This document shows, in pieces, positions 43,127 to 55,461 of a DNA stretch of 64,000 bases. Positions within the stretch are counted from its first letter, which is position 1. Each line of letters opens with the position of its first letter. The stretch lies in IMG/VR virus record IMGVR_UViG_3300044997_001199, positions 124,001 to 188,000 of that record, one strand, 5' to 3'. Under the pieces are notes generated by a model, which worked only from the letters and a program-made list of their open reading frames with translations, was not told the DNA's origin and searched no databases. Both the position numbers and the translations under genes were made by a program.

Positions 43127-44239
43127 TTATCTGCGAGCTCGACCCAGCGTGCCTTTGGTGCCCATGGACTTTCCGTCAGCAGGCTCTTCCGTGTCCAGAT
43201 CAGTGTCCACAGCAAGGTCCATGCTGTTGTCAGGAGGCATGGACATGTTGGTGTTGCCGGCGTCCATGGCTGCGTCCAAGGTCGGCGTCGCTGGCTGTTG
43301 TCCTGTGACAATCCCCAAGGCCACTTCCAACTGTTGTTTGGCAGCCTGTAGGTTTTTTACTAGACCAGTCAGTGCCGCAGTGGCATCGGTATTGAATTGA
43401 TTGGCCTGATCCATGCCGGTTTGGTTACGTATAGAATCTACCAAGGCCGGTAATTCTTTGAACTGCATCTCAGTGGTGTCCTCCAGCATGCCTTGCATCT
43501 TGTCTACCATGTCCTGAGCGGCCAGCACTACCTGTGCTTGCTGCACTTCGCTTTCGTTGAGAGTGCGATAGGCACTGCGCAGGCGGTTTTCTTGTTGCAT
43601 CAACGCAGCACTGACCACGAGTTTTTGTTCGTCGGGGCTGAGGGTTTGACCACTCTGGCTCTTCTTGAGCGCAGCAGCCAATTTGGGATCCTTGACGTTG
43701 ACCGCAGGCTTGGCAGCAGCAGGCTTGGCCGCGGCCGAACCTGATGATTGGGCAGAGGTAGCCGCACCTGTGGTAGGTACCATTTCTTCACGGATTTCTT
43801 GTTGCATCAACGCAGCACTGACCACGAGTTTTTGTTCGTCGGGGCTGAGGGTTTGACCACTCTGGCTCTTCTTGAGCGCAGCAGCCAATTTGGGATCCTT
43901 GACGTTGACCGCAGGCTTGGCAGCAGCAGGCTTGGCTGCGGCCGAACCTGATGATTGGGCAGAGGTAGCCGCACCTGTGGTAGGTACCATTTCTTCACGG
44001 ACTCGACTGGCCAACGCAGTTTCCATCACTACCAACTTGAGATATGCCGGGTCCTGCTCACGAAAATGATGAATCACAGTTTGTTTGTGTTCTTGCATGA
44101 GACCCCGCACGCGATCTAACATCTGGCAGGCCTGGCGCAGCGTCAGCTGGTCAAATGCGATACGAGTCCCAAAGTGATTTTCAAATACCTTGGTAGCATG
44201 GCACACTGGATCAGACGCAGCGAGTTCTTGCAGTTTCAT
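43127..44239 (-). CDS. Probable prohead core/scaffolding protein with 69-aa internal duplication
   Basis: MKLQEL leader; coiled-coil, Ala/Gln-rich; L-x-E sites. Confidence 0.6.
   Translation of the reverse strand: MKLQELAASDPVCHATKVFENHFGTRIAFDQLTLRQACQMLDRVRGLMQEHKQTVIHHFREQDPAYLKLVVMETALASRVREEMVPTTGAATSAQSSGSAAAKPAAAKPAVNVKDPKLAAALKKSQSGQTLSPDEQKLVVSAALMQQEIREEMVPTTGAATSAQSSGSAAAKPAAAKPAVNVKDPKLAAALKKSQSGQTLSPDEQKLVVSAALMQQENRLRSAYRTLNESEVQQAQVVLAAQDMVDKMQGMLEDTTEMQFKELPALVDSIRNQTGMDQANQFNTDATAALTGLVKNLQAAKQQLEVALGIVTGQQPATPTLDAAMDAGNTNMSMPPDNSMDLAVDTDLDTEEPADGKSMGTKGTLGRARR
43588..44001. repeat. 207-bp tandem duplication (206/207 identical)
   Basis: Units 43588-43794 and 43795-44001; single difference C43730/T43937. 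Confidence 0.95.
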
Positions 44240-47792: not shown

Positions 47793-48517
47793 ATCTTGCC
47801 CTGTCTACGCAACGTGGCAATAATCTGTGCGTTTTTGGGGTCAGCCGGATCCAACATTTCTCCTCCTATGGAAATCTGACCACCGGACTGTACTGTGACC
47901 CGAGGAGCTCCAGCCCGTTGGCGGCGCGGAGGCGACTGAAATGTTGCTAGGCTAGCTATGGTATAAAGTTTTTCTGCAGTGGTTTGCCACAAGCGAGAAA
48001 GTTTGGCCTGCTGAGCGTTTGAAGGTTCTGTGGCCACTGTGGCCAGTATGGTACCCATCGCGGTTTCCAGTTCTCGAACTGCATCAAGAGCTACTTTTGC
48101 TCCTTTGCCGCCATAGGCCTGAGGGTCGACCAATTTTGAAATTTCTCGGTAATCTTGTAATTCATCGTTGGACATCTTGTTCAGCGTGGAATTAAGTTGT
48201 GACACCAGGACACGCTTCAGTTGATCTCGAGGTATGTCCTTGACGCTGGTCACTCCGCGAGAACTGTAGGCTTGTGTCATGGCCTGTTGTATGGCCTGGC
48301 TCCACCCTGCATTGAGACTCTGTGCTATCTGATTGACCAGGGGCGCACTGGCTTGTGCGGCCCGACTTTGGGGATCAATGGCGAATCCCGGTGCATTTGA
48401 AGGTTGCGTGATACCTGCGGTACCGGCCTTCTGCGCCAGACGATTGACCGCACCTTGAAGGAACGATGATTGTGCACCTGGGTTGGTAAAGACATTGACA
48501 ATTTCATTGATCAGCAT
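47789..48517 (-). CDS. Probable internal head protein
   Basis: MLINEI leader; Gln/Ala-rich. Confidence 0.55.
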   Translation of the reverse strand: MLINEIVNVFTNPGAQSSFLQGAVNRLAQKAGTAGITQPSNAPGFAIDPQSRAAQASAPLVNQIAQSLNAGWSQAIQQAMTQAYSSRGVTSVKDIPRDQLKRVLVSQLNSTLNKMSNDELQDYREISKLVDPQAYGGKGAKVALDAVRELETAMGTILATVATEPSNAQQAKLSRLWQTTAEKLYTIASLATFQSPPRRQRAGAPRVTVQSGGQISIGGEMLDPADPKNAQIIATLRRQGKI

Positions 48518-48752
48518 GCACTCTCCTCACTGATCTGATGAATTTGCCTGGTTCTTTCATGCGCATGGCATTGAGAAGTTTGCGAGTGAGAATTTCTGCC
48601 TGCTCGGGAGAATATTCAGACTCGATCTGTTCGATCAAGCGTATGGCAGCATCAATGAGATTGTTGGCTCGGCTTTCGATCAAAAGCCGGCGGTCACGCT
48701 CGACGTAGAGGCTGTCCAGTTCTTCTAGTATGCTGCGAGTCTTTTTTTGCAT
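48504..48752 (-). CDS. Conserved hypothetical protein (MQKKTRSILEEL...)
   Basis: TAAATA box upstream; intact 82 aa. Confidence 0.75.
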   Translation of the reverse strand: MQKKTRSILEELDSLYVERDRRLLIESRANNLIDAAIRLIEQIESEYSPEQAEILTRKLLNAMRMKEPGKFIRSVRRVHADQ

Positions 48753-48826
48753 GTGATAGATCTTGGTGTATTATTTAGCGGCATGGCTTTTTCAATAAAT
48801 ATCTACTAGATGAGCAAGGATCACCA

Positions 48827-50275
48827 ATGACCAGTCAGATCAACCCCAACAACATCGATGGTAATTATCCTGTGGCCGGTGTGTCAAACAACACCCAGGG
48901 CATGCGCGACAACTTTACCAACACCCGTACCAACTTTCAGTATGCGGCCAACGAGATTACCGAACTGCGACAAAAGACTGTGTTGAAAACAGCCATCACT
49001 GGTAGCACGCTGGACAACAACATGAATGACAACCTACTGTATGCCGTACAGTTGAAGGATGTCAGTTATACCCAGATCACGGTGGCCACTACCGCAGGCA
49101 CAGTCAATCTAGATTATGCTGCTGGCATGTATCAACAGGTCAATACCACAGGATCCATCAGTCTGGCCTTTGCCGGCTGGCCTGTGGCCGGAACCGTTGG
49201 CACCCTGACAGTGAGCATCAGCATTACCGACACTGCATTCACAGTGACCTTGCCTGCTGCTGTGAGTCAGGGACTGCTGGGGCTCGAAGGTGTGACTCCC
49301 GGCGGCGCTGGGGTCACCAACACCATTACTTTTGGCCAGATTGGCAATTTTGTATTTGAATTTGTCACTGCCGATGCCGGAGAAACCATAACAATCGTCG
49401 ATCAATCGCGACCGCGCACAGTGTATACCTCGCCCATAGCAATCACATCTGAAGCCGTGAGCACGTCCACTGCGACCGGTGCTCTCACCGTGGACGGCGG
49501 AGTGGGCGTGTCGGGCGACCTCTATGTGGGCGGCGACATCGTAGGAAACATCGTGGTCACTGGTATCAGTCTCACTGGCACGGTCACAGGCGGCAACGTG
49601 ATTTCTCAAGGGGTCGTGACTGCAACTGGAAACATTTTGGGCGGCAACATGATTTCTCTAGGCACTGTGACTGCTGCTGGCAATGTCACTGCCACTGGTC
49701 TGCGAGCACAGACTCTGAGTCTCACCGGCAACATACTGTCGGCTGCCAATGTCACTGGCAATGTCAACGGTGGCAATCTACGCACCGATGGCCTGATGTC
49801 CGTGGCTGGCAATGTCACTGGTGGCAATCTCCGCACCGCAGGATTGGTCACTGCCACGGGCAATGTCACTGGTGGCAACATGATCACCACCGGATTGATC
49901 TCAGCTGCCGATGCCATCACTTCGTCGGGTGCCACCGCAGGAGTGGGCTACAGAACCGGTGCTGGCGGCACAGTGTCACAGTCAACTTCCAAGAGCACCG
50001 CAGTCACGCTCAACCGTGTCTGCGGCGAAATCACCATGAATGGTGCACAGTTGAACGGCGACAGCACAGTGAGTTTCACGCTCAACAATACTGCCGTGGC
50101 CAACACCGATGTGATCATAGTCAATCAAGTGGGCGGCGGCAACATTGGCGAATATGCATTCAATGGCAGCTGCGGCGCCGGCAGCGCAGAAATTTCAGTG
50201 CATAACATGACCGATGTCAATCGGTCCGATGCCATCGTGTTGAGATTCGTCGTAGTCAAGGCCGCGATCAATTGA
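48827..50275 (+). CDS. Tail fibre-like virion protein with GNVTGGNL repeats
   Basis: N-terminal MTSQINPNNIDG.YPVAG..N.TQG.RDNF..I/TRTNF; degenerate G-N-V-T-G-G-N repeats; late promoter. Confidence 0.75.
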   Translation: MTSQINPNNIDGNYPVAGVSNNTQGMRDNFTNTRTNFQYAANEITELRQKTVLKTAITGSTLDNNMNDNLLYAVQLKDVSYTQITVATTAGTVNLDYAAGMYQQVNTTGSISLAFAGWPVAGTVGTLTVSISITDTAFTVTLPAAVSQGLLGLEGVTPGGAGVTNTITFGQIGNFVFEFVTADAGETITIVDQSRPRTVYTSPIAITSEAVSTSTATGALTVDGGVGVSGDLYVGGDIVGNIVVTGISLTGTVTGGNVISQGVVTATGNILGGNMISLGTVTAAGNVTATGLRAQTLSLTGNILSAANVTGNVNGGNLRTDGLMSVAGNVTGGNLRTAGLVTATGNVTGGNMITTGLISAADAITSSGATAGVGYRTGAGGTVSQSTSKSTAVTLNRVCGEITMNGAQLNGDSTVSFTLNNTAVANTDVIIVNQVGGGNIGEYAFNGSCGAGSAEISVHNMTDVNRSDAIVLRFVVVKAAIN

Positions 50276-50297
50276 TCGCGCCACTAATGTTGTATAG

Positions 50298-50447
50298 CCA
50301 ATAGCCGCAGATGACACGGATAAAACCTCCTCCGCCCAGTGGGAACGAGCTGCAGGAACTCCGGCCTGGGAACAACCTGCCCGTGTCACAGCAGATATAC
50401 AAAGCGCCAAGCTAAAACAGTTACTGGGACAAATAAAACAATCATGA
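50298..50447 (+). pseudogene. 3' stump of a second replicative helicase gene
   Basis: ...PARVTADIQSAKLKQLLGQIKQS* vs resident helicase end PKITAEVQSNKLKQLLNQIKS*. Confidence 0.85.
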
Positions 50448-51097
50448 ATTTGATCTGTTTTCCACACTACACCTGTGGCGGCCTGTTGTGCGATGTGCTC
50501 AATGAAACCTGGAGCGATATTGCACCCAATGGTGGGATCGACTCCATACATCACAGCCTGGGCAAAATCGGAGATGACGACACAGTTTTGACCAACTATG
50601 ATCCGCAACAGCTGATCGATGGTTTGAAAAATCTACAGTGCAGTGACCATACTTGGATAGGCACACACTGCTGGCCCGGCAAACTGGATTTTGGCCTGTT
50701 TGATCAAGTCATTGCGGTCACAACTACCACATTCCGCAGCAAACTTTATCGTTGGGTCAGAGCATATCATCATTATTATCATGACTCAGAACCCTGGACA
50801 CAGACCCGGGCACAGGCCCGCATTGACAAAGAAAGAGAAACTGCCAAAAACTATGTCATAGCATTTGAACCGGTCAGTCATGCCTGTGTGACCAACATAG
50901 AGTTTGCAGAAATAGTGGACACCACAACTCAGTTCCGTAAACTGGTGGGCCAACATCCTGTTGACCAGCATGTTGCTCGATGGCAAAATATCAACAGTTT
51001 TTTATACCGTCCTGATCTATGGACCAGTACAGCAGCACAGCGTTTTTACGAAGCAGAGTTAGAAATCAATCTGCGGCAACACTATGTCTACCAATAA
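50444..51097 (+). CDS. Hypothetical protein, sulfotransferase-like N-terminal loop
   Basis: LICFPHYTCGGLLCDVL; similar opening in 58736..59611. Confidence 0.55.
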   Translation: MNLICFPHYTCGGLLCDVLNETWSDIAPNGGIDSIHHSLGKIGDDDTVLTNYDPQQLIDGLKNLQCSDHTWIGTHCWPGKLDFGLFDQVIAVTTTTFRSKLYRWVRAYHHYYHDSEPWTQTRAQARIDKERETAKNYVIAFEPVSHACVTNIEFAEIVDTTTQFRKLVGQHPVDQHVARWQNINSFLYRPDLWTSTAAQRFYEAELEINLRQHYVYQ

Positions 51098-51779
51098 AAT
51101 TTTTTGTTTCGGAGACGGGTATGCACACGGTCACATTTGGCCAGAATGGCCACAAATTTTACAGGCCTTGTTGCCCTATCATGACATAGTGACACACTCC
51201 GGAGTAGGAGCCGGCAATGAATTCCTGATAGATCGTCTGTTGACTTCACCCTGTGCCAACAGCACCGTGATTTTTCAATGGGCAAAATCACAAAGATTTG
51301 ACAAGCTCATACAAGATCAACCCTGGAAAGATCTAGCACTGCAAGACCCTGTGTATTTTTTCAACTTTGAAGAATCCCCGTCGGGCACCTGGTGGTTGTC
51401 CAGTGGCACACAAAATCGCAAAATCCGGGAATACCATGATTTTTTTGTACAGGACCAGCAGGCCAATCTGCGCACACACAATCAAAAAATACTGCTGGAA
51501 AATTATCTACAAAATCAACGTTGCCGTTATTGGTTTACCAGCACCCTGGAACAGGAAATATTCTCTAGAAAACATGCGTTGCGAGGTCCAGAAATCCAGC
51601 CCAGTCCTATATCTCATTTTTATTTTGTAGTAGACTGCATAAAGCCTGCTTTAGATCTGAGATTTGAACCAGGCAGACAACAAAAATTACAAACTCTGTT
51701 GCAAAACACTGTTTGGACACCCTTCGACCCAGATAGACAGTCAATTTGGCAAAAGATCTGCACACAGATTGGCCAGTGA
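51084..51779 (+). CDS. SGNH-hydrolase-like protein lacking block I Ser
   Basis: FCFGDGYAHG...WPQIL...GVGAGN. Confidence 0.55.
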   Translation: MSTNKIFCFGDGYAHGHIWPEWPQILQALLPYHDIVTHSGVGAGNEFLIDRLLTSPCANSTVIFQWAKSQRFDKLIQDQPWKDLALQDPVYFFNFEESPSGTWWLSSGTQNRKIREYHDFFVQDQQANLRTHNQKILLENYLQNQRCRYWFTSTLEQEIFSRKHALRGPEIQPSPISHFYFVVDCIKPALDLRFEPGRQQKLQTLLQNTVWTPFDPDRQSIWQKICTQIGQ

Positions 51780-51823
51780 TAGCAAGTCATTGTCCATAAA
51801 TAATAAAAAGGTACTAACCTAAC

Positions 51824-51946
51824 ATGCAGAAAAAGACTCGCAGTCTACTTGAAGAACTTGATGCCATGTACGTCCATCGCGACCGGCGCCATGTGATCGA
51901 AAGCCGCGCAGCCAATCTATTGCTATACAGTTACGTTGATGGTTAG
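51824..51946 (+). pseudogene. 5' stump of a paralog of 48504..48752
   Basis: MQKKTRSLLEELDAMYVHRDRRHVIESRAANL then unrelated LLYSYVDG*; own TAAATA box at ~51796. Confidence 0.88.
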
Positions 51947-51994
51947 CAAAATACCATCCGGCACGGTCAATACAAAAATATTTTTTATCTTTCA

Positions 51995-53380
51995 TTACGA
52001 TTTAATTTGATTCAATAGTTGTTTGAGTTTGTTTGACTGTACTTCTGCTGTGATCTTGGGCGTATCTTTGGCAGTTTCTTGCATGGTGCTACGTGCCTTG
52101 ATCGACTCCATTATGGCCGATGCAGGATTTCTGGCGTGGCCTTCTTGTGCTTCCTCGCCGAGATCAGTGATACGCATGGTTTCGACGTTGTATTCTAGAT
52201 CGATCTTCTGGCCCACGCCGGTCGAGCTGCGCGATTTCATGCACTGAATCTGATAGCGGCCACGCTCGCGCATGGCACGACTGGTAAAGATACCAAACAC
52301 ATTGTCTGCGGTGTTGATCTTGCTGATACCGCCCGAAATATGACTGTGGTCAAACTCAATCTCTTCCACCGCAGATCGATTCAATTGACTGGCAGTCACA
52401 AACAACACATTGAGTTCTTTGGCCAGATTTCTCAGTTCTTCACTTACATACTTGTCTTTGACAAATAGGTCATTGGGCGATACCTTGGCTGACACCGGCA
52501 TCAAGAGATCCAGATAGTCAACCATGACAAAGTCCACACGGATACCTGTCTGTATCTGCAGCTCCTTGAGATAACTGCGGATATCATTTACTGTGCTTTG
52601 TGCAGACAAGGCCTTGACTCGATATTGCCCGGCTTTTTTGGCTACCAGTCGAACTTTGAGTTCTGTGGTATCGATATCTTTGCGAATATCTTTGGTTGAC
52701 ATATTAGTCAGCATGGCATCGGTTCTCAGTGCACACAGTTCTTCGCTGAGTTCCAAACTTACATACACCCCCGACAGGCCCTGCTGCAACCAATTCAATG
52801 CCAGGTTCAGCATTACCAGGCTTTTGCCCGATCCTGACCCACCTGCAAAGATATTAAGTTCTCCGCGGCTGAATCCACCATAGAGTAACCGGTCCAGTGT
52901 AGACCATCCTGTGCTGACCTGACCACCAGAATTGAAATATCGATTGATACGATCTCGGGGATCGGCCCAGTAGTCTGTGCCCATGTCCCGCGTGAGGCTG
53001 ATTTGCACTGCATCTTTGATCAGTTTTTCTACCGGGTCATATTCACCTTTTTCTAGCAGGTCCGCTGATTTGAGAATGGCTCGTTCCAGTTCCTGTCTAC
53101 GTGTAAATGATTCAAACTCAGTGAGAAACCAATCAAAATGTCCTTCATTCAGATCGGGTATAGATTCTAATTTCGTACCAGTGGCTGCCGTGATCTGAGC
53201 GCGGTCAGGCATAGTGCGGAATTCGTCGCTGTGCCGTTGAATGAATCTAGCGGTATCGCGAAGGCTACGATCAAAATTGTCCGGATTGAAGATGTTTTGT
53301 ACGCGCACGTAACTCTGTGCATCCTCTAGCATCATCTCCAAAAACAATCGCTGAACATCAACTCCGTAATCTTTGAGCAA
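51995..53380 (-). CDS. Replicative DNA helicase (DnaB/T4 gp41-like)
   Basis: GGSGSGKS; SLELSE; VDYLDL; TASQLNRS; SGGISK..TAD; TTG start. Confidence 0.95.
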   Translation of the reverse strand: MLKDYGVDVQRLFLEMMLEDAQSYVRVQNIFNPDNFDRSLRDTARFIQRHSDEFRTMPDRAQITAATGTKLESIPDLNEGHFDWFLTEFESFTRRQELERAILKSADLLEKGEYDPVEKLIKDAVQISLTRDMGTDYWADPRDRINRYFNSGGQVSTGWSTLDRLLYGGFSRGELNIFAGGSGSGKSLVMLNLALNWLQQGLSGVYVSLELSEELCALRTDAMLTNMSTKDIRKDIDTTELKVRLVAKKAGQYRVKALSAQSTVNDIRSYLKELQIQTGIRVDFVMVDYLDLLMPVSAKVSPNDLFVKDKYVSEELRNLAKELNVLFVTASQLNRSAVEEIEFDHSHISGGISKINTADNVFGIFTSRAMRERGRYQIQCMKSRSSTGVGQKIDLEYNVETMRITDLGEEAQEGHARNPASAIMESIKARSTMQETAKDTPKITAEVQSNKLKQLLNQIKS

Positions 53381-54359
53381 GCTGGCGCCTCCGTAGTTCA
53401 ATTTTGATCCGGCTGGTTTCCCGGGCCTGCATTATAGTTAGCACAGTGGCCAACTGGCCCCAACGAACCACTGCATCATTGACATCCTTGACATCGCTGG
53501 GCCAGTCAGGCATTGATACTGCCCATCCCAGTTCTATGGCCCGATCCACCAGGCGCAGGCCGGCTTCGTCCTGGTCTGGCACCACAGTGATCGCACGGTC
53601 CAGACTGCGGATCAATCGTGCCTGTGTGTCGGAAATATCAGCATGAAGCACTGCTAGCCCCGACACGCTCAAGGCATCAAACACACCCTCGGTCACGATC
53701 ACATGTTTCCAGGTCGGGCGTTGTAGGTCTGTGCCAAACACATAACCAGGCTGGATGTCGTGGATGTACTTGGGTGTGCGGTCGTCCAACATGCGCGAAC
53801 TGTAACCCACTATGACATTGTCATAGGTAAATGGCACTATGACCTGGGGACGGGTCCAATGCACACCGTCGTTTTTCTTCACGTAACCAAACCGGACAGT
53901 CATGAGCGGATAATCCGCGGGCACTGCACGGCGTCTTGCATAGTGCCACTCTGCTTCGTGCTCGGGTGTCAGCAGCTCGGCACCAGGAGGCAAATCGCGT
54001 TCCTCAAAACGGATGCTTTGCGACTCGTTGGCTGTGCGTTGCCGATCGTCCAGGATGCCCTGGACATCCCGATGTCGCAGACTTTCCAGATTGGCGCGTT
54101 CAATTTCTTCCTGCGGTACTCCCAACCATGACAGCAGCCGACGAGACTTGAAACTTAGTGTCCGACCTTGTATAAAGTTAGCGGTATATCCACAATTGAA
54201 ACAATGATACCCCCACCCCCGATCGGACACCTTGATTCCACCGCGGCTGCGCCGATCAGCCGAAGTGCCGTTGTGCACACAACAAGGAGCATCAAAACTG
54301 ATCCAACCGCTGGCCGAGGCCTTGCGGCGCGCAGGAACATAGGTTAGAATATCTAACAT
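53358..54359 (-). CDS. DNA primase (T4 gp61-like)
   Basis: CCVHN...YHCFNCG Zn finger; VTEGVFDA; PDQDEAG; KDVND (TOPRIM). Confidence 0.93.
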   Translation of the reverse strand: MLDILTYVPARRKASASGWISFDAPCCVHNGTSADRRSRGGIKVSDRGWGYHCFNCGYTANFIQGRTLSFKSRRLLSWLGVPQEEIERANLESLRHRDVQGILDDRQRTANESQSIRFEERDLPPGAELLTPEHEAEWHYARRRAVPADYPLMTVRFGYVKKNDGVHWTRPQVIVPFTYDNVIVGYSSRMLDDRTPKYIHDIQPGYVFGTDLQRPTWKHVIVTEGVFDALSVSGLAVLHADISDTQARLIRSLDRAITVVPDQDEAGLRLVDRAIELGWAVSMPDWPSDVKDVNDAVVRWGQLATVLTIMQARETSRIKIELRRRQLAQRLRS

Positions 54360-54390
54360 GTCCATATTGTAACAGAACTCAAATCAACGA

Positions 54391-55461
54391 TCAACGGTAT
54401 TGGAGATTGGTAATCGTGCCGTTGTCGATGTAGACTGTGGCCGTTTGTGTGCCTTGAAACTGTATGGGAGTGTAGCCCGATCCACCATCCGTGATAGTGA
54501 TAGTGCTCACAGCGCCGTCGCTGCCGATGGTGGCTCGAGCACGAGCACCTGCCCCGTTGCCTAGAATCTGTACCCTGGGATTGGCCACATAATTTTGTCC
54601 AAGATTGCCCAGAGCAATGGAGGTCACCGCACCGGCTGTGGTCGTGGCCGTGGCCGTGGCTCCAGACCCAATGGAATTGTTGAATGCTGCTCGAATCAAG
54701 GGATGGAATCCCTGTATGTTAAAATATTGTGTGCTGGTCTCTGCAAAGTATTCAAAACTTTCAGTAATGTCGTACCAAACAGATTCACAGTTTTCTGCGC
54801 CTTGAAATTTCACAGTACCGGTAAATGTGTCAAGATCCATCTTTACGGTGGTCAGACTCTGATGACTGGTATCTATGTAACTGCTGTAGAATTCTGTGAG
54901 TTGAGTGGTATTGACCGGGGGTGGATAGTTGGCCCAGTCTGGCCAGTTGGTGGGGCCGGGCTGCAGTTGTTGAGCCTTGTCATAGATAGTGGGAATTGTC
55001 AAGACCGCGCTGGGCACAAACTCGGGCAACACACTGTCCACGATGTCGCAGTAGCCTCGGGCCTGTGAATTGGCATTGACATACACTGCCTGCACATAGT
55101 TGCCGCTGGTTCGTTCAACACTGTAACTGGCCGGCTGAGCAGTGATTTCAATGGTGTCGGCGGTATCCAGTACTACCTTGACACGCCCAGTGGGTGCATT
55201 GAGTATTTCCATGGGCTTTTCTATCAAGAGGCGATCGCCGTTTTGGCTCAGTAAACGGAACACAAAAGAACTGCCGGTAATATTCACTGGCTTCTGATCT
55301 TGATTGATGAACTCAAACAACAACACATTGTCTACACCTTTGTTTACAGTCAAATATTTTGCGTACACCGGGTCATACCTCGCAGTAAAGTATCCACCGC
55401 TGGTGTCGATCAATAATACTCGAACAATTTGTTGGTATAAGTAAGCAGTGGTAGAATACAT
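54391..55461 (-). CDS. Probable virion/baseplate protein
   Basis: Late promoter; BppU-like N-half; Gly/Thr-rich I.I...G..Y..P.V.I.G.G.GA.A.A C-terminal motif. Confidence 0.6.
   Translation of the reverse strand: MYSTTAYLYQQIVRVLLIDTSGGYFTARYDPVYAKYLTVNKGVDNVLLFEFINQDQKPVNITGSSFVFRLLSQNGDRLLIEKPMEILNAPTGRVKVVLDTADTIEITAQPASYSVERTSGNYVQAVYVNANSQARGYCDIVDSVLPEFVPSAVLTIPTIYDKAQQLQPGPTNWPDWANYPPPVNTTQLTEFYSSYIDTSHQSLTTVKMDLDTFTGTVKFQGAENCESVWYDITESFEYFAETSTQYFNIQGFHPLIRAAFNNSIGSGATATATTTAGAVTSIALGNLGQNYVANPRVQILGNGAGARARATIGSDGAVSTITITDGGSGYTPIQFQGTQTATVYIDNGTITNLQYR

What the first reader, a model, noticed from the sequence alone, without database searches (positions are those of the whole stretch)
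50298..51946. Inverted cargo block carrying stumps of both resident flanking genes
On the + strand the block reads: last ~50 codons of a helicase (ARVTADIQSAKLKQLLGQIKQS*), two accessory ORFs, then a late promoter and the first ~32 codons of the MQKKTR gene. The intact helicase (51995..53380) and intact MQKKTR gene (48504..48752) flank this region on the - strand in the same relative order. So a piece of the homologous locus from a diverged relative (many synonymous differences between the MQKKTR copies) sits at its own locus but backwards, with truncated anchors. Ordinary homologous exchange would give a same-orientation swap with no stumps; this implies locus-directed but illegitimate capture, or an inversion after duplication, at a module hotspot that also holds the + strand tail fibre gene.
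Basis: partly seen in the sequence, partly recalled or inferred. Interest (0 to 1): 0.72.

Follow-up and report, generated by a model that had tools for sequence, protein, structure and literature searches.

The report
Backwards gene cassette with recombination scars
In a lake jumbo phage, a two-gene accessory cassette that every sampled relative carries right after the helicase gene sits backwards here, still attached to broken-off ends of a foreign helicase gene and a foreign virion gene. This is a real, fairly recent scar of illegitimate recombination in a gene-swapping hotspot, not a new kind of element.

Summary

**What is there**
- The window comes from a 215-kb record of a freshwater jumbo myovirus. 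The nearest isolates are PA5oct-like phages, with 50% amino-acid identity in the helicase.
- Window 50304-51922 (+) holds four pieces in order: the last 47 codons of a helicase, orfA, orfB, and a late-type promoter plus the first 33 codons of the MQK gene.
- The intact resident helicase and MQK gene flank this block on the minus strand.

**Evidence**
- About 60 related loci all read helicase, orfA, orfB, optionally a tail-fibre gene on the other strand, then MQK. In every one orfA and orfB lie on the helicase strand. Only this phage has them inverted.
- Both stumps come from other lineages. The helicase stump is 96.6% identical to the end of an intact helicase in another contig, starting exactly at 50304. 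orfA-orfB is 97% identical to copies in the normal layout.
- The MQK copies differ mostly at synonymous sites (dS 0.90, dN 0.18).
- Independent assemblies from at least two other lake samples cross both junctions with no differences.
- The right junction is composite. It also holds 8 codons of a radical-SAM gene and 19 codons of another gene.

**Reading**
This is a scar of illegitimate recombination, probably template switching, in a hypervariable cassette slot. The mechanism is inferred. Interest is moderate.

The parts
48504..48752 (-). Resident, intact MQK gene (82 aa, small virion-protein family).
   Evidence: phrog_11854 'virion structural protein', E 5e-11, residues 1-78. Present downstream of the slot in nearly all related loci.
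48653..48777 (-). Resident arm of the inverted repeat: promoter-like region plus the first 33 codons of MQK.
   Evidence: The longest exact run shared with the other arm is only 14 nt.
48827..50275 (+). Tail-fibre-like gene (482 aa) in its canonical position and orientation, divergent from MQK.
   Evidence: phrog_18251 on the C-terminal part. On the strand opposite the helicase in 22 of 22 relatives that carry it. L120 is collinear with the window up to the stop codon at 50273. An ATAAATA motif lies 32 nt upstream.
50264..50279 (.). Perfect 16-nt palindrome across the tail-fibre stop codon. It reads A-I-N-stop on both strands.
   Evidence: Read from the sequence. In L120 the two convergent genes likewise share a palindromic TTAA stop overlap.
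50276..50303 (.). 28-nt filler at the left junction, of unknown source.
   Evidence: No match in 145 loci or elsewhere in the genome.
50304..50447 (+). Helicase tail stump: the last 47 codons plus the stop of a foreign helicase variant carrying the WERxxGTPAWEQ motif. It has no start codon in frame.
   Evidence: Profile E 1.2e-21. 96.6% identical over 145 nt to the end of the intact L145 helicase, starting at 50304. In run X1 a second path joins at 50304 with in-frame helicase sequence upstream. The resident helicase tail lacks the motif.
50444..51097 (+). orfA (217 aa), intact. Its ATG overlaps the stump's stop codon (ATGA), as it does in relatives. Sulfotransferase-like fold is only a lead.
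   Evidence: No Pfam or PHROG hit. Atlas structure matches to sulfotransferase clusters at TM 0.55-0.60. On the helicase strand in 26 of 27 slot loci; the window is the only inverted case. 96-100% nt identity to L110.
51084..51779 (+). orfB (231 aa), intact. SGNH/GDSL-like fold (DUF6071 neighbourhood) is only a lead. The motif reads GDG, not GDS.
   Evidence: Atlas TM 0.53-0.84. 97% amino-acid identity to P0001, which sits in the canonical layout on 10 contigs shown of the 12 that carry it. On the helicase strand in 29 of 30 slot loci.
51797..51922 (+). MQK stump: ATAAATA late-type promoter-like motif, ribosome-binding region and the first 33 codons. The ORF continues out of homology to the stop at 51946.
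   Evidence: dS 0.90 and dN 0.18 against the resident copy.
51915..51971 (-). Internal fragment (about 19 codons, IDRAGWYFANHQRNCIAID) of a gene like the 187-aa ORF at L074:10207-10770.
   Evidence: BLASTP pairwise E 1e-8, 12 of 25 identical. E 0.002 against six-frame translations of all loci. 57-nt nucleotide alignment. Moderately supported.
51972..51995 (-). First 8 codons (MKDKKYFC) of a radical-SAM gene that follows the helicase in some relatives. Its ATG overlaps the helicase stop codon.
   Evidence: 24 of 24 nt identical to the start of 379/380-aa genes in L013, L015, L061 and L065. Those genes hit Pfam Radical_SAM.
51819..51995 (-). Chimeric 58-aa ORF created by the rearrangement: radical-SAM start, then the L074-like fragment, then the antisense of the MQK stump.
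   Evidence: No evidence that it is expressed.
51995..53401 (-). Resident, intact DnaB-like replicative helicase.
   Evidence: Pfam DnaB_C E 1e-22. phrog_19 E 3e-75. Full-length tail. L120 is collinear with the window from 52001 onward.

Best explanation
The block is a scar of illegitimate recombination in a hypervariable cassette slot of a freshwater jumbo myovirus.

**The slot.** It lies between the helicase stop codon and the tail-fibre/MQK unit. In relatives it holds interchangeable accessory genes: radical-SAM enzymes, orfA-orfB and others. These are normally exchanged in the same orientation, with crossovers in the conserved helicase tail and the conserved MQK promoter and head.

**What happened here.** The recipient phage had a layout like L120 or L061: helicase, then a radical-SAM gene, then the convergent tail-fibre gene, then MQK. 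A 1.6-kb piece of a co-circulating relative's locus was joined in backwards. The piece ran from 47 codons before the relative's helicase stop to codon 33 of its MQK gene. It replaced the previous occupant of the slot. That occupant survives only as its first 8 codons, beside a 19-codon piece of another gene.

**What is shown.** The pieces are foreign in origin. The joints lie inside genes and lack homology. The arrangement is real in the population.

**What is inferred.** The most likely process is serial template switching or break-and-join at microhomologies during recombination-dependent replication in a mixed infection. Pairing of the homologous loci would keep the donor template close, which would explain why the piece landed at its own locus.

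**Inferred consequences.**
- orfA and orfB are uncoupled from the helicase. They now lie downstream of the late tail-fibre gene on its strand.
- The stump's late-type promoter now points antisense into the helicase gene.
For: **Canonical layout.**
- Helicase, orfA, orfB and MQK lie on one strand in all other loci and on the Logan contigs L110-L119.

**Foreign origin.**
- The helicase stump is 96.6% identical to the intact L145 helicase end from 50304.
- The resident helicase tail is another variant.
- orfA-orfB is 97% identical to L110, but only between about 50444 and 51800.
- The MQK copies show dS 0.90 and dN 0.18. The helicase stump against the L074 tail gives omega 0.12. Divergence therefore arose while the copies were functional genes.

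**Recipient type.**
- L120 is collinear with the window up to the tail-fibre stop and from the helicase stop. It carries a radical-SAM gene in the slot.
- The window keeps 24 of 24 nt of a radical-SAM gene start.

**Composite junction.** A 57-nt fragment resembling an L074 gene lies in it.

**Microhomology.** Possible 5-8-nt matches occur at two joints.

**Other scars in the slot.** Same-orientation helicase-tail stumps occur in L017, L051 and L059.

**Real in nature.** Contigs from runs X4 and X5 cross both junctions with no differences. A phage with the donor-type helicase tail co-occurs in run X1 at depth 16 against 42.

**Recombination machinery.** A UvsX-like recombinase is encoded.
Against: - No immediate parent was found: no phage with the same flanks and an intact slot, and no donor carrying all three block parts together. 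The number and order of events therefore remain open.
- Microhomologies are judged against distant homologues and are uncertain. At the left joint none is evident.
- The fragments at the right junction could be older, separate deletions rather than part of one event.
- Landing at the same locus could simply reflect selection for a tolerant site.
- Expression consequences are untested.
Confidence: 0.7

Rival explanations
1. Two-step history. A same-orientation mosaic formed first by unequal or illegitimate exchange between aligned loci: helicase, remnants, foreign helicase tail, orfA, orfB, MQK head, tail fibre, MQK. The 1.6-kb block then inverted in place.
For: Same-orientation helicase-tail stumps exist in three relatives: L017, L051 and L059. 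This model explains for free why the block is at its own locus.
Against: The inversion breakpoints would have to coincide exactly with both earlier illegitimate joints, because no direct-orientation remnant of either stump is left beside the block. No inverted repeats lie at the block's ends to drive such an inversion. It needs more events than a one-step capture.
Confidence: 0.17
2. The 3.07-kb segment between the two MQK heads (tail fibre, helicase stump, orfA, orfB) is an invertible switch. Recombination between the inverted MQK heads would flip it, toggling orfA-orfB between a helicase-like and a tail-fibre-linked orientation while always keeping an intact MQK gene.
For: A 125-nt inverted repeat flanks the segment. 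Either orientation would preserve a full MQK gene; this is reasoning from the map. The segment contains a tail-fibre gene, as the Mu G and P1 C segments do (from general knowledge).
Against: The arms are only 78% identical and the longest exact run is 14 nt. No resolvase/invertase or tyrosine recombinase was found in the 215-kb record. No alternative joints appeared in four runs, although only contigs were available. No relative shows the flipped form.
Confidence: 0.05
3. Assembly chimera: contigs of two co-occurring related phages were joined through the shared conserved helicase tail or MQK head.
For: Related phages co-occur. The Logan graph of run X1 branches at 50304-50448.
Against: Independent assemblies from other samples and studies carry the same joints with zero differences: X4 over 49541-51513 and 51577-52300, and X5 over 50248-50483 and 51641-52190. 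The joints lie outside the shared conserved segments.
Confidence: 0.02
4. The block is a self-mobile element, such as a homing-endonuclease cassette or a mini-circle, that carries the gene ends as homology arms and inserts in either orientation.
For: The arms are similar in size, 144 and 126 nt. PeSL mini-circles are known in T4-type phages (PMC2839356).
Against: No nuclease, integrase or transposase domain is present in orfA or orfB. There is no repeated promoter-stem-loop motif. Among 27-30 slot loci carrying the cassette, only one is inverted. A circle would have to integrate exactly at its own closure point to give this structure.
Confidence: 0.04

Closest known systems
Hyperplastic regions and PeSL-mediated modular shuffling in T4-type phages (Arbiol et al. 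2010, PMC2839356; Comeau et al. 2014, PMC4122927)
   Same: A slot of non-essential, highly variable accessory genes lies between conserved core genes. Cassettes are swapped between co-circulating relatives, with crossovers at short conserved boundary sequences.
   Different: The conserved boundaries here are coding sequence (the helicase tail, the MQK head and its late-type promoter), not repeated early-promoter/stem-loop motifs. This block is inverted and bounded by illegitimate joints, so it is not a same-orientation product of homologous exchange.
Illegitimate-recombination model of phage mosaicism (Hendrix/Hatfull; from general knowledge), and relaxed homologous recombination (De Paepe et al. 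2014, PMC3945230, seen only in the search listing)
   Same: The novel joints fall at non-homologous points. Only products that leave the essential genes intact survive. Partial genes remain as scars.
   Different: Most described joints lie at gene borders with the scars already erased. Here at least four gene fragments remain, and lineages resembling three of the four were identified (the intact L145 helicase for the helicase stump, the radical-SAM gene start in L013/L061 and the L074 gene; none for the MQK stump). The piece came from the homologous locus and went in backwards.
Microhomology-mediated template-switch rearrangements (MMBIR/FoSTeS; reviews PMC3678771 and PMC4888836, seen only in the search listing; content from general knowledge)
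   Same: A complex joint with short templated inserts of 24 and 57 nt, an inverted copied segment, and a template that is the paired homologous region.
   Different: Described mainly in eukaryotes and bacteria. Here it is only inferred from the structure, and the microhomologies could not be fixed because the exact parents are unknown.
Invertible tail-fibre segments (Mu G, P1 C, Min, shufflons; from general knowledge)
   Same: Inverted repeats flank a segment that contains a tail-fibre gene.
   Different: No invertase was found. The repeats are diverged gene heads, not crossover sites. The tail-fibre gene is complete and is not split by the repeat. Only one orientation is seen.

Membership tests
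PeSL-type modular shuffling in a hyperplastic region | A variable slot of accessory genes between conserved core genes | tested here: met
   The helicase-to-MQK distance ranges from 39 to 4079 nt and the slot holds at least 20 ORF clusters across the 78 related loci with both flanks mapped.
PeSL-type modular shuffling in a hyperplastic region | Repeated composite promoter plus stem-loop motifs at the cassette borders | tested here: not met
   No repeated intergenic motif in the locus or genome. No terminator-like site in 50276-51995.
PeSL-type modular shuffling in a hyperplastic region | Products are same-orientation insertions, deletions or replacements made by homologous exchange | tested here: not met
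   The block is inverted and its outer joints lie inside genes without homology.
Site-specific invertible segment (Gin/Cin/Hin type) | Short, near-identical inverted crossover sites | tested here: not met
   The arms are 78% identical and the longest exact run is 14 nt.
Site-specific invertible segment (Gin/Cin/Hin type) | An invertase gene is encoded | tested here: inconclusive
   No PF00239 or PF00589 match in the 215-kb record, but CheckV rates the record 61% complete.
Site-specific invertible segment (Gin/Cin/Hin type) | Both orientations coexist in a population | tested here: inconclusive
   No alternative joints in four runs, but only assembled contigs were available, and contigs drop minor variants.
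Illegitimate-recombination mosaic joint | Joints fall inside genes with no flanking homology between the partners | tested here: met
   The left joint at 50303/50304 lies 47 codons before the stop of the intact L145 helicase. The right joints lie at MQK codon 33, inside an L074-like gene, and at radical-SAM codon 8.
Illegitimate-recombination mosaic joint | The parts trace to different lineages | tested here: met
   L145-type helicase tail, L110-type orfA-orfB, L120-type flanks and an L013/L061-type radical-SAM start. Synonymous-dominated divergence.
Template-switch (MMBIR-like) complex rearrangement | Several breakpoints with short templated inserts and an inverted copied segment | tested here: met
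   A 24-nt and a 57-nt fragment lie beside the 1.6-kb inverted block.
Template-switch (MMBIR-like) complex rearrangement | Microhomology of a few bases at each joint | tested here: inconclusive
   Possible TTTTGT-type and ATAGA-type overlaps at two joints, judged against homologues about 77% identical. None is evident at 50303/50304.
Template-switch (MMBIR-like) complex rearrangement | Arises during break-induced or recombination-dependent replication | not testable with these tools
   Only supporting context: a UvsX-like recombinase is encoded.
SGNH/GDSL hydrolase (orfB) | Catalytic serine in the N-terminal GDS motif and a family-level sequence match | tested here: not met
   No Pfam hit. The motif reads F-G-D-G in orfB and in the L051 homologue. 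Only a fold-level resemblance exists, TM 0.53-0.64 to GDSL clusters.
Sulfotransferase (orfA) | Family-level sequence match or a clear fold match | tested here: inconclusive
   No Pfam hit. Atlas TM 0.52-0.60 to sulfotransferase clusters, from a query model with pLDDT 0.59.

The most novel reading that the evidence does not exclude
Pairing of homologous loci between co-infecting jumbo phages guides strand-blind template switching. Cassettes would then be recaptured at their own locus in either orientation, giving locus-directed illegitimate recombination. A variant of this reading is that the diverged MQK-head repeats still allow rare flipping of the 3-kb segment. That flipping would move orfA-orfB between early (helicase-linked) and late (tail-fibre-linked) expression.
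Probability: 0.15. Interest if true: 0.6.

Novelty: new member of a known kind. Interest (0 to 1): 0.42.

Why it matters
Phage mosaicism is usually inferred from clean gene-border joints whose history has been erased. This locus is an unusually legible case:
- At least four gene fragments survive.
- One joint is mapped to the base (50303/50304).
- Lineages matching the separate parts are still circulating, one of them in the same lake sample.
- The arrangement recurs in several samples.

It shows homologous cassette exchange at conserved gene ends and illegitimate joining working side by side in one slot of an uncultured jumbo phage.

It is also a natural experiment. A gene pair that about 60 relatives keep start-to-stop coupled to the helicase has been uncoupled and placed behind a late gene.

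It does not reveal a new kind of element.

Tried and rejected
**Searches that found nothing useful**
- blastn of 47800-54400 against isolate phages: no match.
- Exact search for the resident helicase-end plus radical-SAM-start joint in IMG/VR: none.
- Exact and back-translated searches for an intact donor-type MQK gene: none.
- Back-translated search for a closer source of the L074-like fragment: none.
- Exact look-up of the tail-fibre protein returned only the phage's own 6.4-kb Logan contig.
- The closest tail-fibre relative is only 76% identical, so no 'empty site' parent was recovered.
- The 28-nt left filler matched nothing.

**Ideas considered and rejected**
- Homing endonuclease: the extra genes in the slot and in the primase-helicase gaps of relatives are radical-SAM-like or unknown proteins, not nucleases.
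- PeSL motifs: none present.
- In-situ duplication of the resident genes: the stump helicase tail is a different variant, and divergence is dominated by synonymous changes.

**Limitation**
- Only assembled contigs, not raw reads, could be laid on the region, and only one such call was allowed.
Full report
**Setting**

- The window is bases 124001-188000 of a single 215,330-bp virus record, rated 61% complete by CheckV.
- The region of interest lies in the replication module. It holds a Toprim primase (53358-54365, minus strand), a DnaB-like helicase (51995-53401, minus strand) and a small virion-protein gene, here called MQK (48504-48752, minus strand; phrog_11854).
- The nearest isolate phages are Pseudomonas jumbo phages of the PA5oct type, at 50% amino-acid identity in the helicase.
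- Nucleotide search against isolate phages finds nothing.
- Sequencing runs holding the sequence are lake-water metagenomes.

- The plus strand at 50304-50447 reads 47 codons and a stop that match helicase C-termini: profile E 1.2e-21 and 81% over 104 nt to L074.
- orfA (50444-51097) starts with an ATGA overlap on that stop codon. orfB follows at 51084-51779.
- Window 51797-51922 repeats, in inverted orientation, the upstream region and first 33 codons of the resident MQK gene. Genome-wide self-BLAST gives E 7e-15 and the profile gives E 1.4e-21.
- An ATAAATA motif precedes the stump's ATG. Of the 38 copies in the genome, 16 lie within 60 nt upstream of ORFs, most of them large and including the tail-fibre-like gene. 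About 1.3 would be expected, so 'late-type promoter' is a reasonable label.

**What relatives look like**

I gathered three sets of related loci:
- 80 IMG/VR loci found with the helicase;
- 29 more found with orfB;
- 19 metagenome loci found with orfA.

Findings:
- The order primase, helicase, variable slot, MQK, then a 625-aa DUF6267 protein is conserved.
- The slot ranges from 39 to 4079 nt and holds at least 20 ORF clusters: radical-SAM-like enzymes, orfA, orfB, a tail-fibre-like gene and others.
- orfA lies on the helicase strand in 26 of 27 slot loci and orfB in 29 of 30. The single exception for each is this window.
- The tail-fibre gene is on the opposite strand, next to MQK, in 22 of 22 loci.
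- Where orfA follows the helicase directly, as in about 45 loci, its start lies within a few bases of the helicase stop; where read (window stump, L110), the ATG overlaps the stop (ATGA).
- The block in the window is therefore the canonical helicase-orfA-orfB-MQK module turned around.

**Origin of the pieces**

- The stump's helicase tail carries a WERxxGTPAWEQ motif that the resident tail lacks.
- An intact helicase in L145, 78% identical to the resident protein, ends with a sequence 96.6% identical to window 50304-50448. The identity starts exactly at 50304.
- In run X1 a second graph path, at depth 16 against 42 for the window path, joins at 50304. Its upstream sequence is in-frame helicase matching L145. 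This fixes the left joint at 50303/50304.
- orfA-orfB is 97% identical in nucleotides to Logan contigs L110-L119. Those contigs have the normal layout but a different helicase tail.
- The high identity with L110 is confined to about 50444-51800. Same-orientation homologous exchange at the gene borders is therefore also frequent.
- The two MQK heads differ with dS 0.90 and dN 0.18. The helicase stump against the L074 tail gives omega 0.12. This pattern fits copies that diverged as working genes in separate genomes, not a local duplicate decaying in place.

**The recipient and the right junction**

- L120, the closest relative by tail fibre (76% amino-acid identity), is collinear with the window up to the tail-fibre stop (50273) and again from the helicase stop (52001). 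Between these points it holds a 334-aa radical-SAM-type gene on the helicase strand.
- In the window, the 24 nt after the helicase stop (51995-51972, minus strand) are identical to the start of 379/380-aa radical-SAM genes in L013, L015, L061 and L065.
- Next comes a 57-nt stretch (51971-51915, minus strand) encoding 19 residues similar to the middle of a 187-aa ORF in L074: pairwise E 1e-8, and E 0.002 against all loci.
- The MQK stump follows.
- On the left, 28 nt (50276-50303) have no identifiable source.
- The slot's former content was therefore replaced, and the right border is a patchwork of fragments.
- Short overlaps that could be microhomologies occur at two joints. They are judged against distant homologues, and none is evident at the left joint.

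**Reality in nature**

- Contigs assembled independently from run X4 cover 49541-51513 and 51577-52300.
- Contigs from X5 cover 50248-50483 and 51641-52190.
- All have zero differences, and no alternative joints were reported.
- Only contigs were available, so a rare second orientation cannot be excluded.

**Mechanism**

Shown:
- Two or more joints fall inside genes without homology.
- The parts come from different lineages.
- Same-orientation helicase-tail stumps also occur in three relatives, L017, L051 and L059.
- A UvsX-like recombinase is encoded.

Inferred:
- An inverted segment copied from the homologous locus, lying beside short templated fragments, is the signature expected from serial template switching or misjoined breaks during recombination-dependent replication in a mixed infection.
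- Pairing of the homologous flanks would explain why the piece landed at its own locus.

Rivals:
- A two-step path (same-orientation mosaic, then in-place inversion) is possible. It needs the inversion breakpoints to coincide with older joints.
- A programmed switch is unlikely. The arms are 78% identical with at most 14 identical bases in a row, no invertase or integrase was found, and only one orientation is seen.
- No nuclease or integrase domain lies in the block.

**Consequences (inferred)**

- The helicase stump has no in-frame start codon, so it is not translated.
- orfA and orfB are the only copies in the record. They now lie 168 nt downstream of the tail-fibre gene on its strand, with no terminator-like site between them. 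They are probably read with a late gene instead of with the helicase.
- The stump's late-type promoter and 40-codon ORF point into the 3' end of the helicase gene.
- A 58-codon chimeric ORF was created on the minus strand (51819-51995).
- orfA has a weak sulfotransferase-like fold signal. orfB has an SGNH-like fold signal but a GDG motif in place of GDS. Their functions remain open.

**Comparison and verdict**

- The locus behaves like a hyperplastic region of T4-type phages (PMC2839356, PMC4122927). It lacks their repeated promoter-stem-loop motifs; its exchange anchors are conserved coding ends.
- The inverted block fits the long-standing illegitimate-recombination view of phage mosaicism. 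It is a well-preserved, recent example rather than a new kind of element.
- Interest is moderate. It would rise if both orientations or repeated strand-blind recapture were shown.

Noticed in passing
L017:11191-11265, L051:4706-4765, L059:3502-3570: Same-orientation stumps of the last 20-25 helicase codons lie downstream of inserted cassettes in three relatives (E 1e-12 to 1e-16). Tail duplication is therefore a recurrent scar in this slot.
   Followed up: partly
window 51972-51995; L013:9404-9427, L061:9990-10013: The first 24 nt of a radical-SAM gene are 100% identical across the loci read (L013 and L061), although their proteins visibly differ after the first 17 residues and the helicases are about 80% identical. 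This suggests a conserved boundary element or a recently spread cassette edge.
   Followed up: partly
window 50264-50279; L120:2696-2699: Convergent genes share a palindromic stop overlap: TCAATTGA here and TTAA in L120. In the window both strands read A-I-N-stop.
   Followed up: no
L022:4053-5531, L038:1628-3433, L045:6867-8001, L057:7233-8001: Some relatives have a second cassette slot between primase and helicase. It holds radical-SAM-like and unknown genes, not homing endonucleases.
   Followed up: partly
L074:9461-11974: One relative fills the slot with three unrelated genes (249, 187 and 405 aa), all on the strand opposite the helicase. None has a Pfam hit.
   Followed up: partly
window 43584-44001: A 211-nt direct tandem duplication at 99% identity lies inside the 370-aa ORF at 43127-44239 (minus strand).
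   Followed up: no
genome C1:114044-114153 and C1:23879-23988 (outside the window): A 110-nt inverted repeat at 95% identity, with the copies 90 kb apart. It is the strongest long-range inverted repeat in the record.
   Followed up: no
genome C1:110140-111645 (outside the window); window 48817-49050: A second tail-fibre-like gene (501 aa) shares its N-terminal part with the window's tail-fibre gene: 47% amino-acid identity over 290 residues. It also has an ATAAATA motif upstream.
   Followed up: no
genome C1:29500-34400 and C1:116100-118400 (outside the window): Large families of diverged direct repeats lie inside fibre-like genes. They share repeat units with the middle of the window's tail-fibre gene (49560-49900).
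   Followed up: no
window 51084-51150; L051:3986-4690: The orfB family conserves F-G-D-G where SGNH hydrolases have G-D-S. The usual serine nucleophile is missing at that position.
   Followed up: partly
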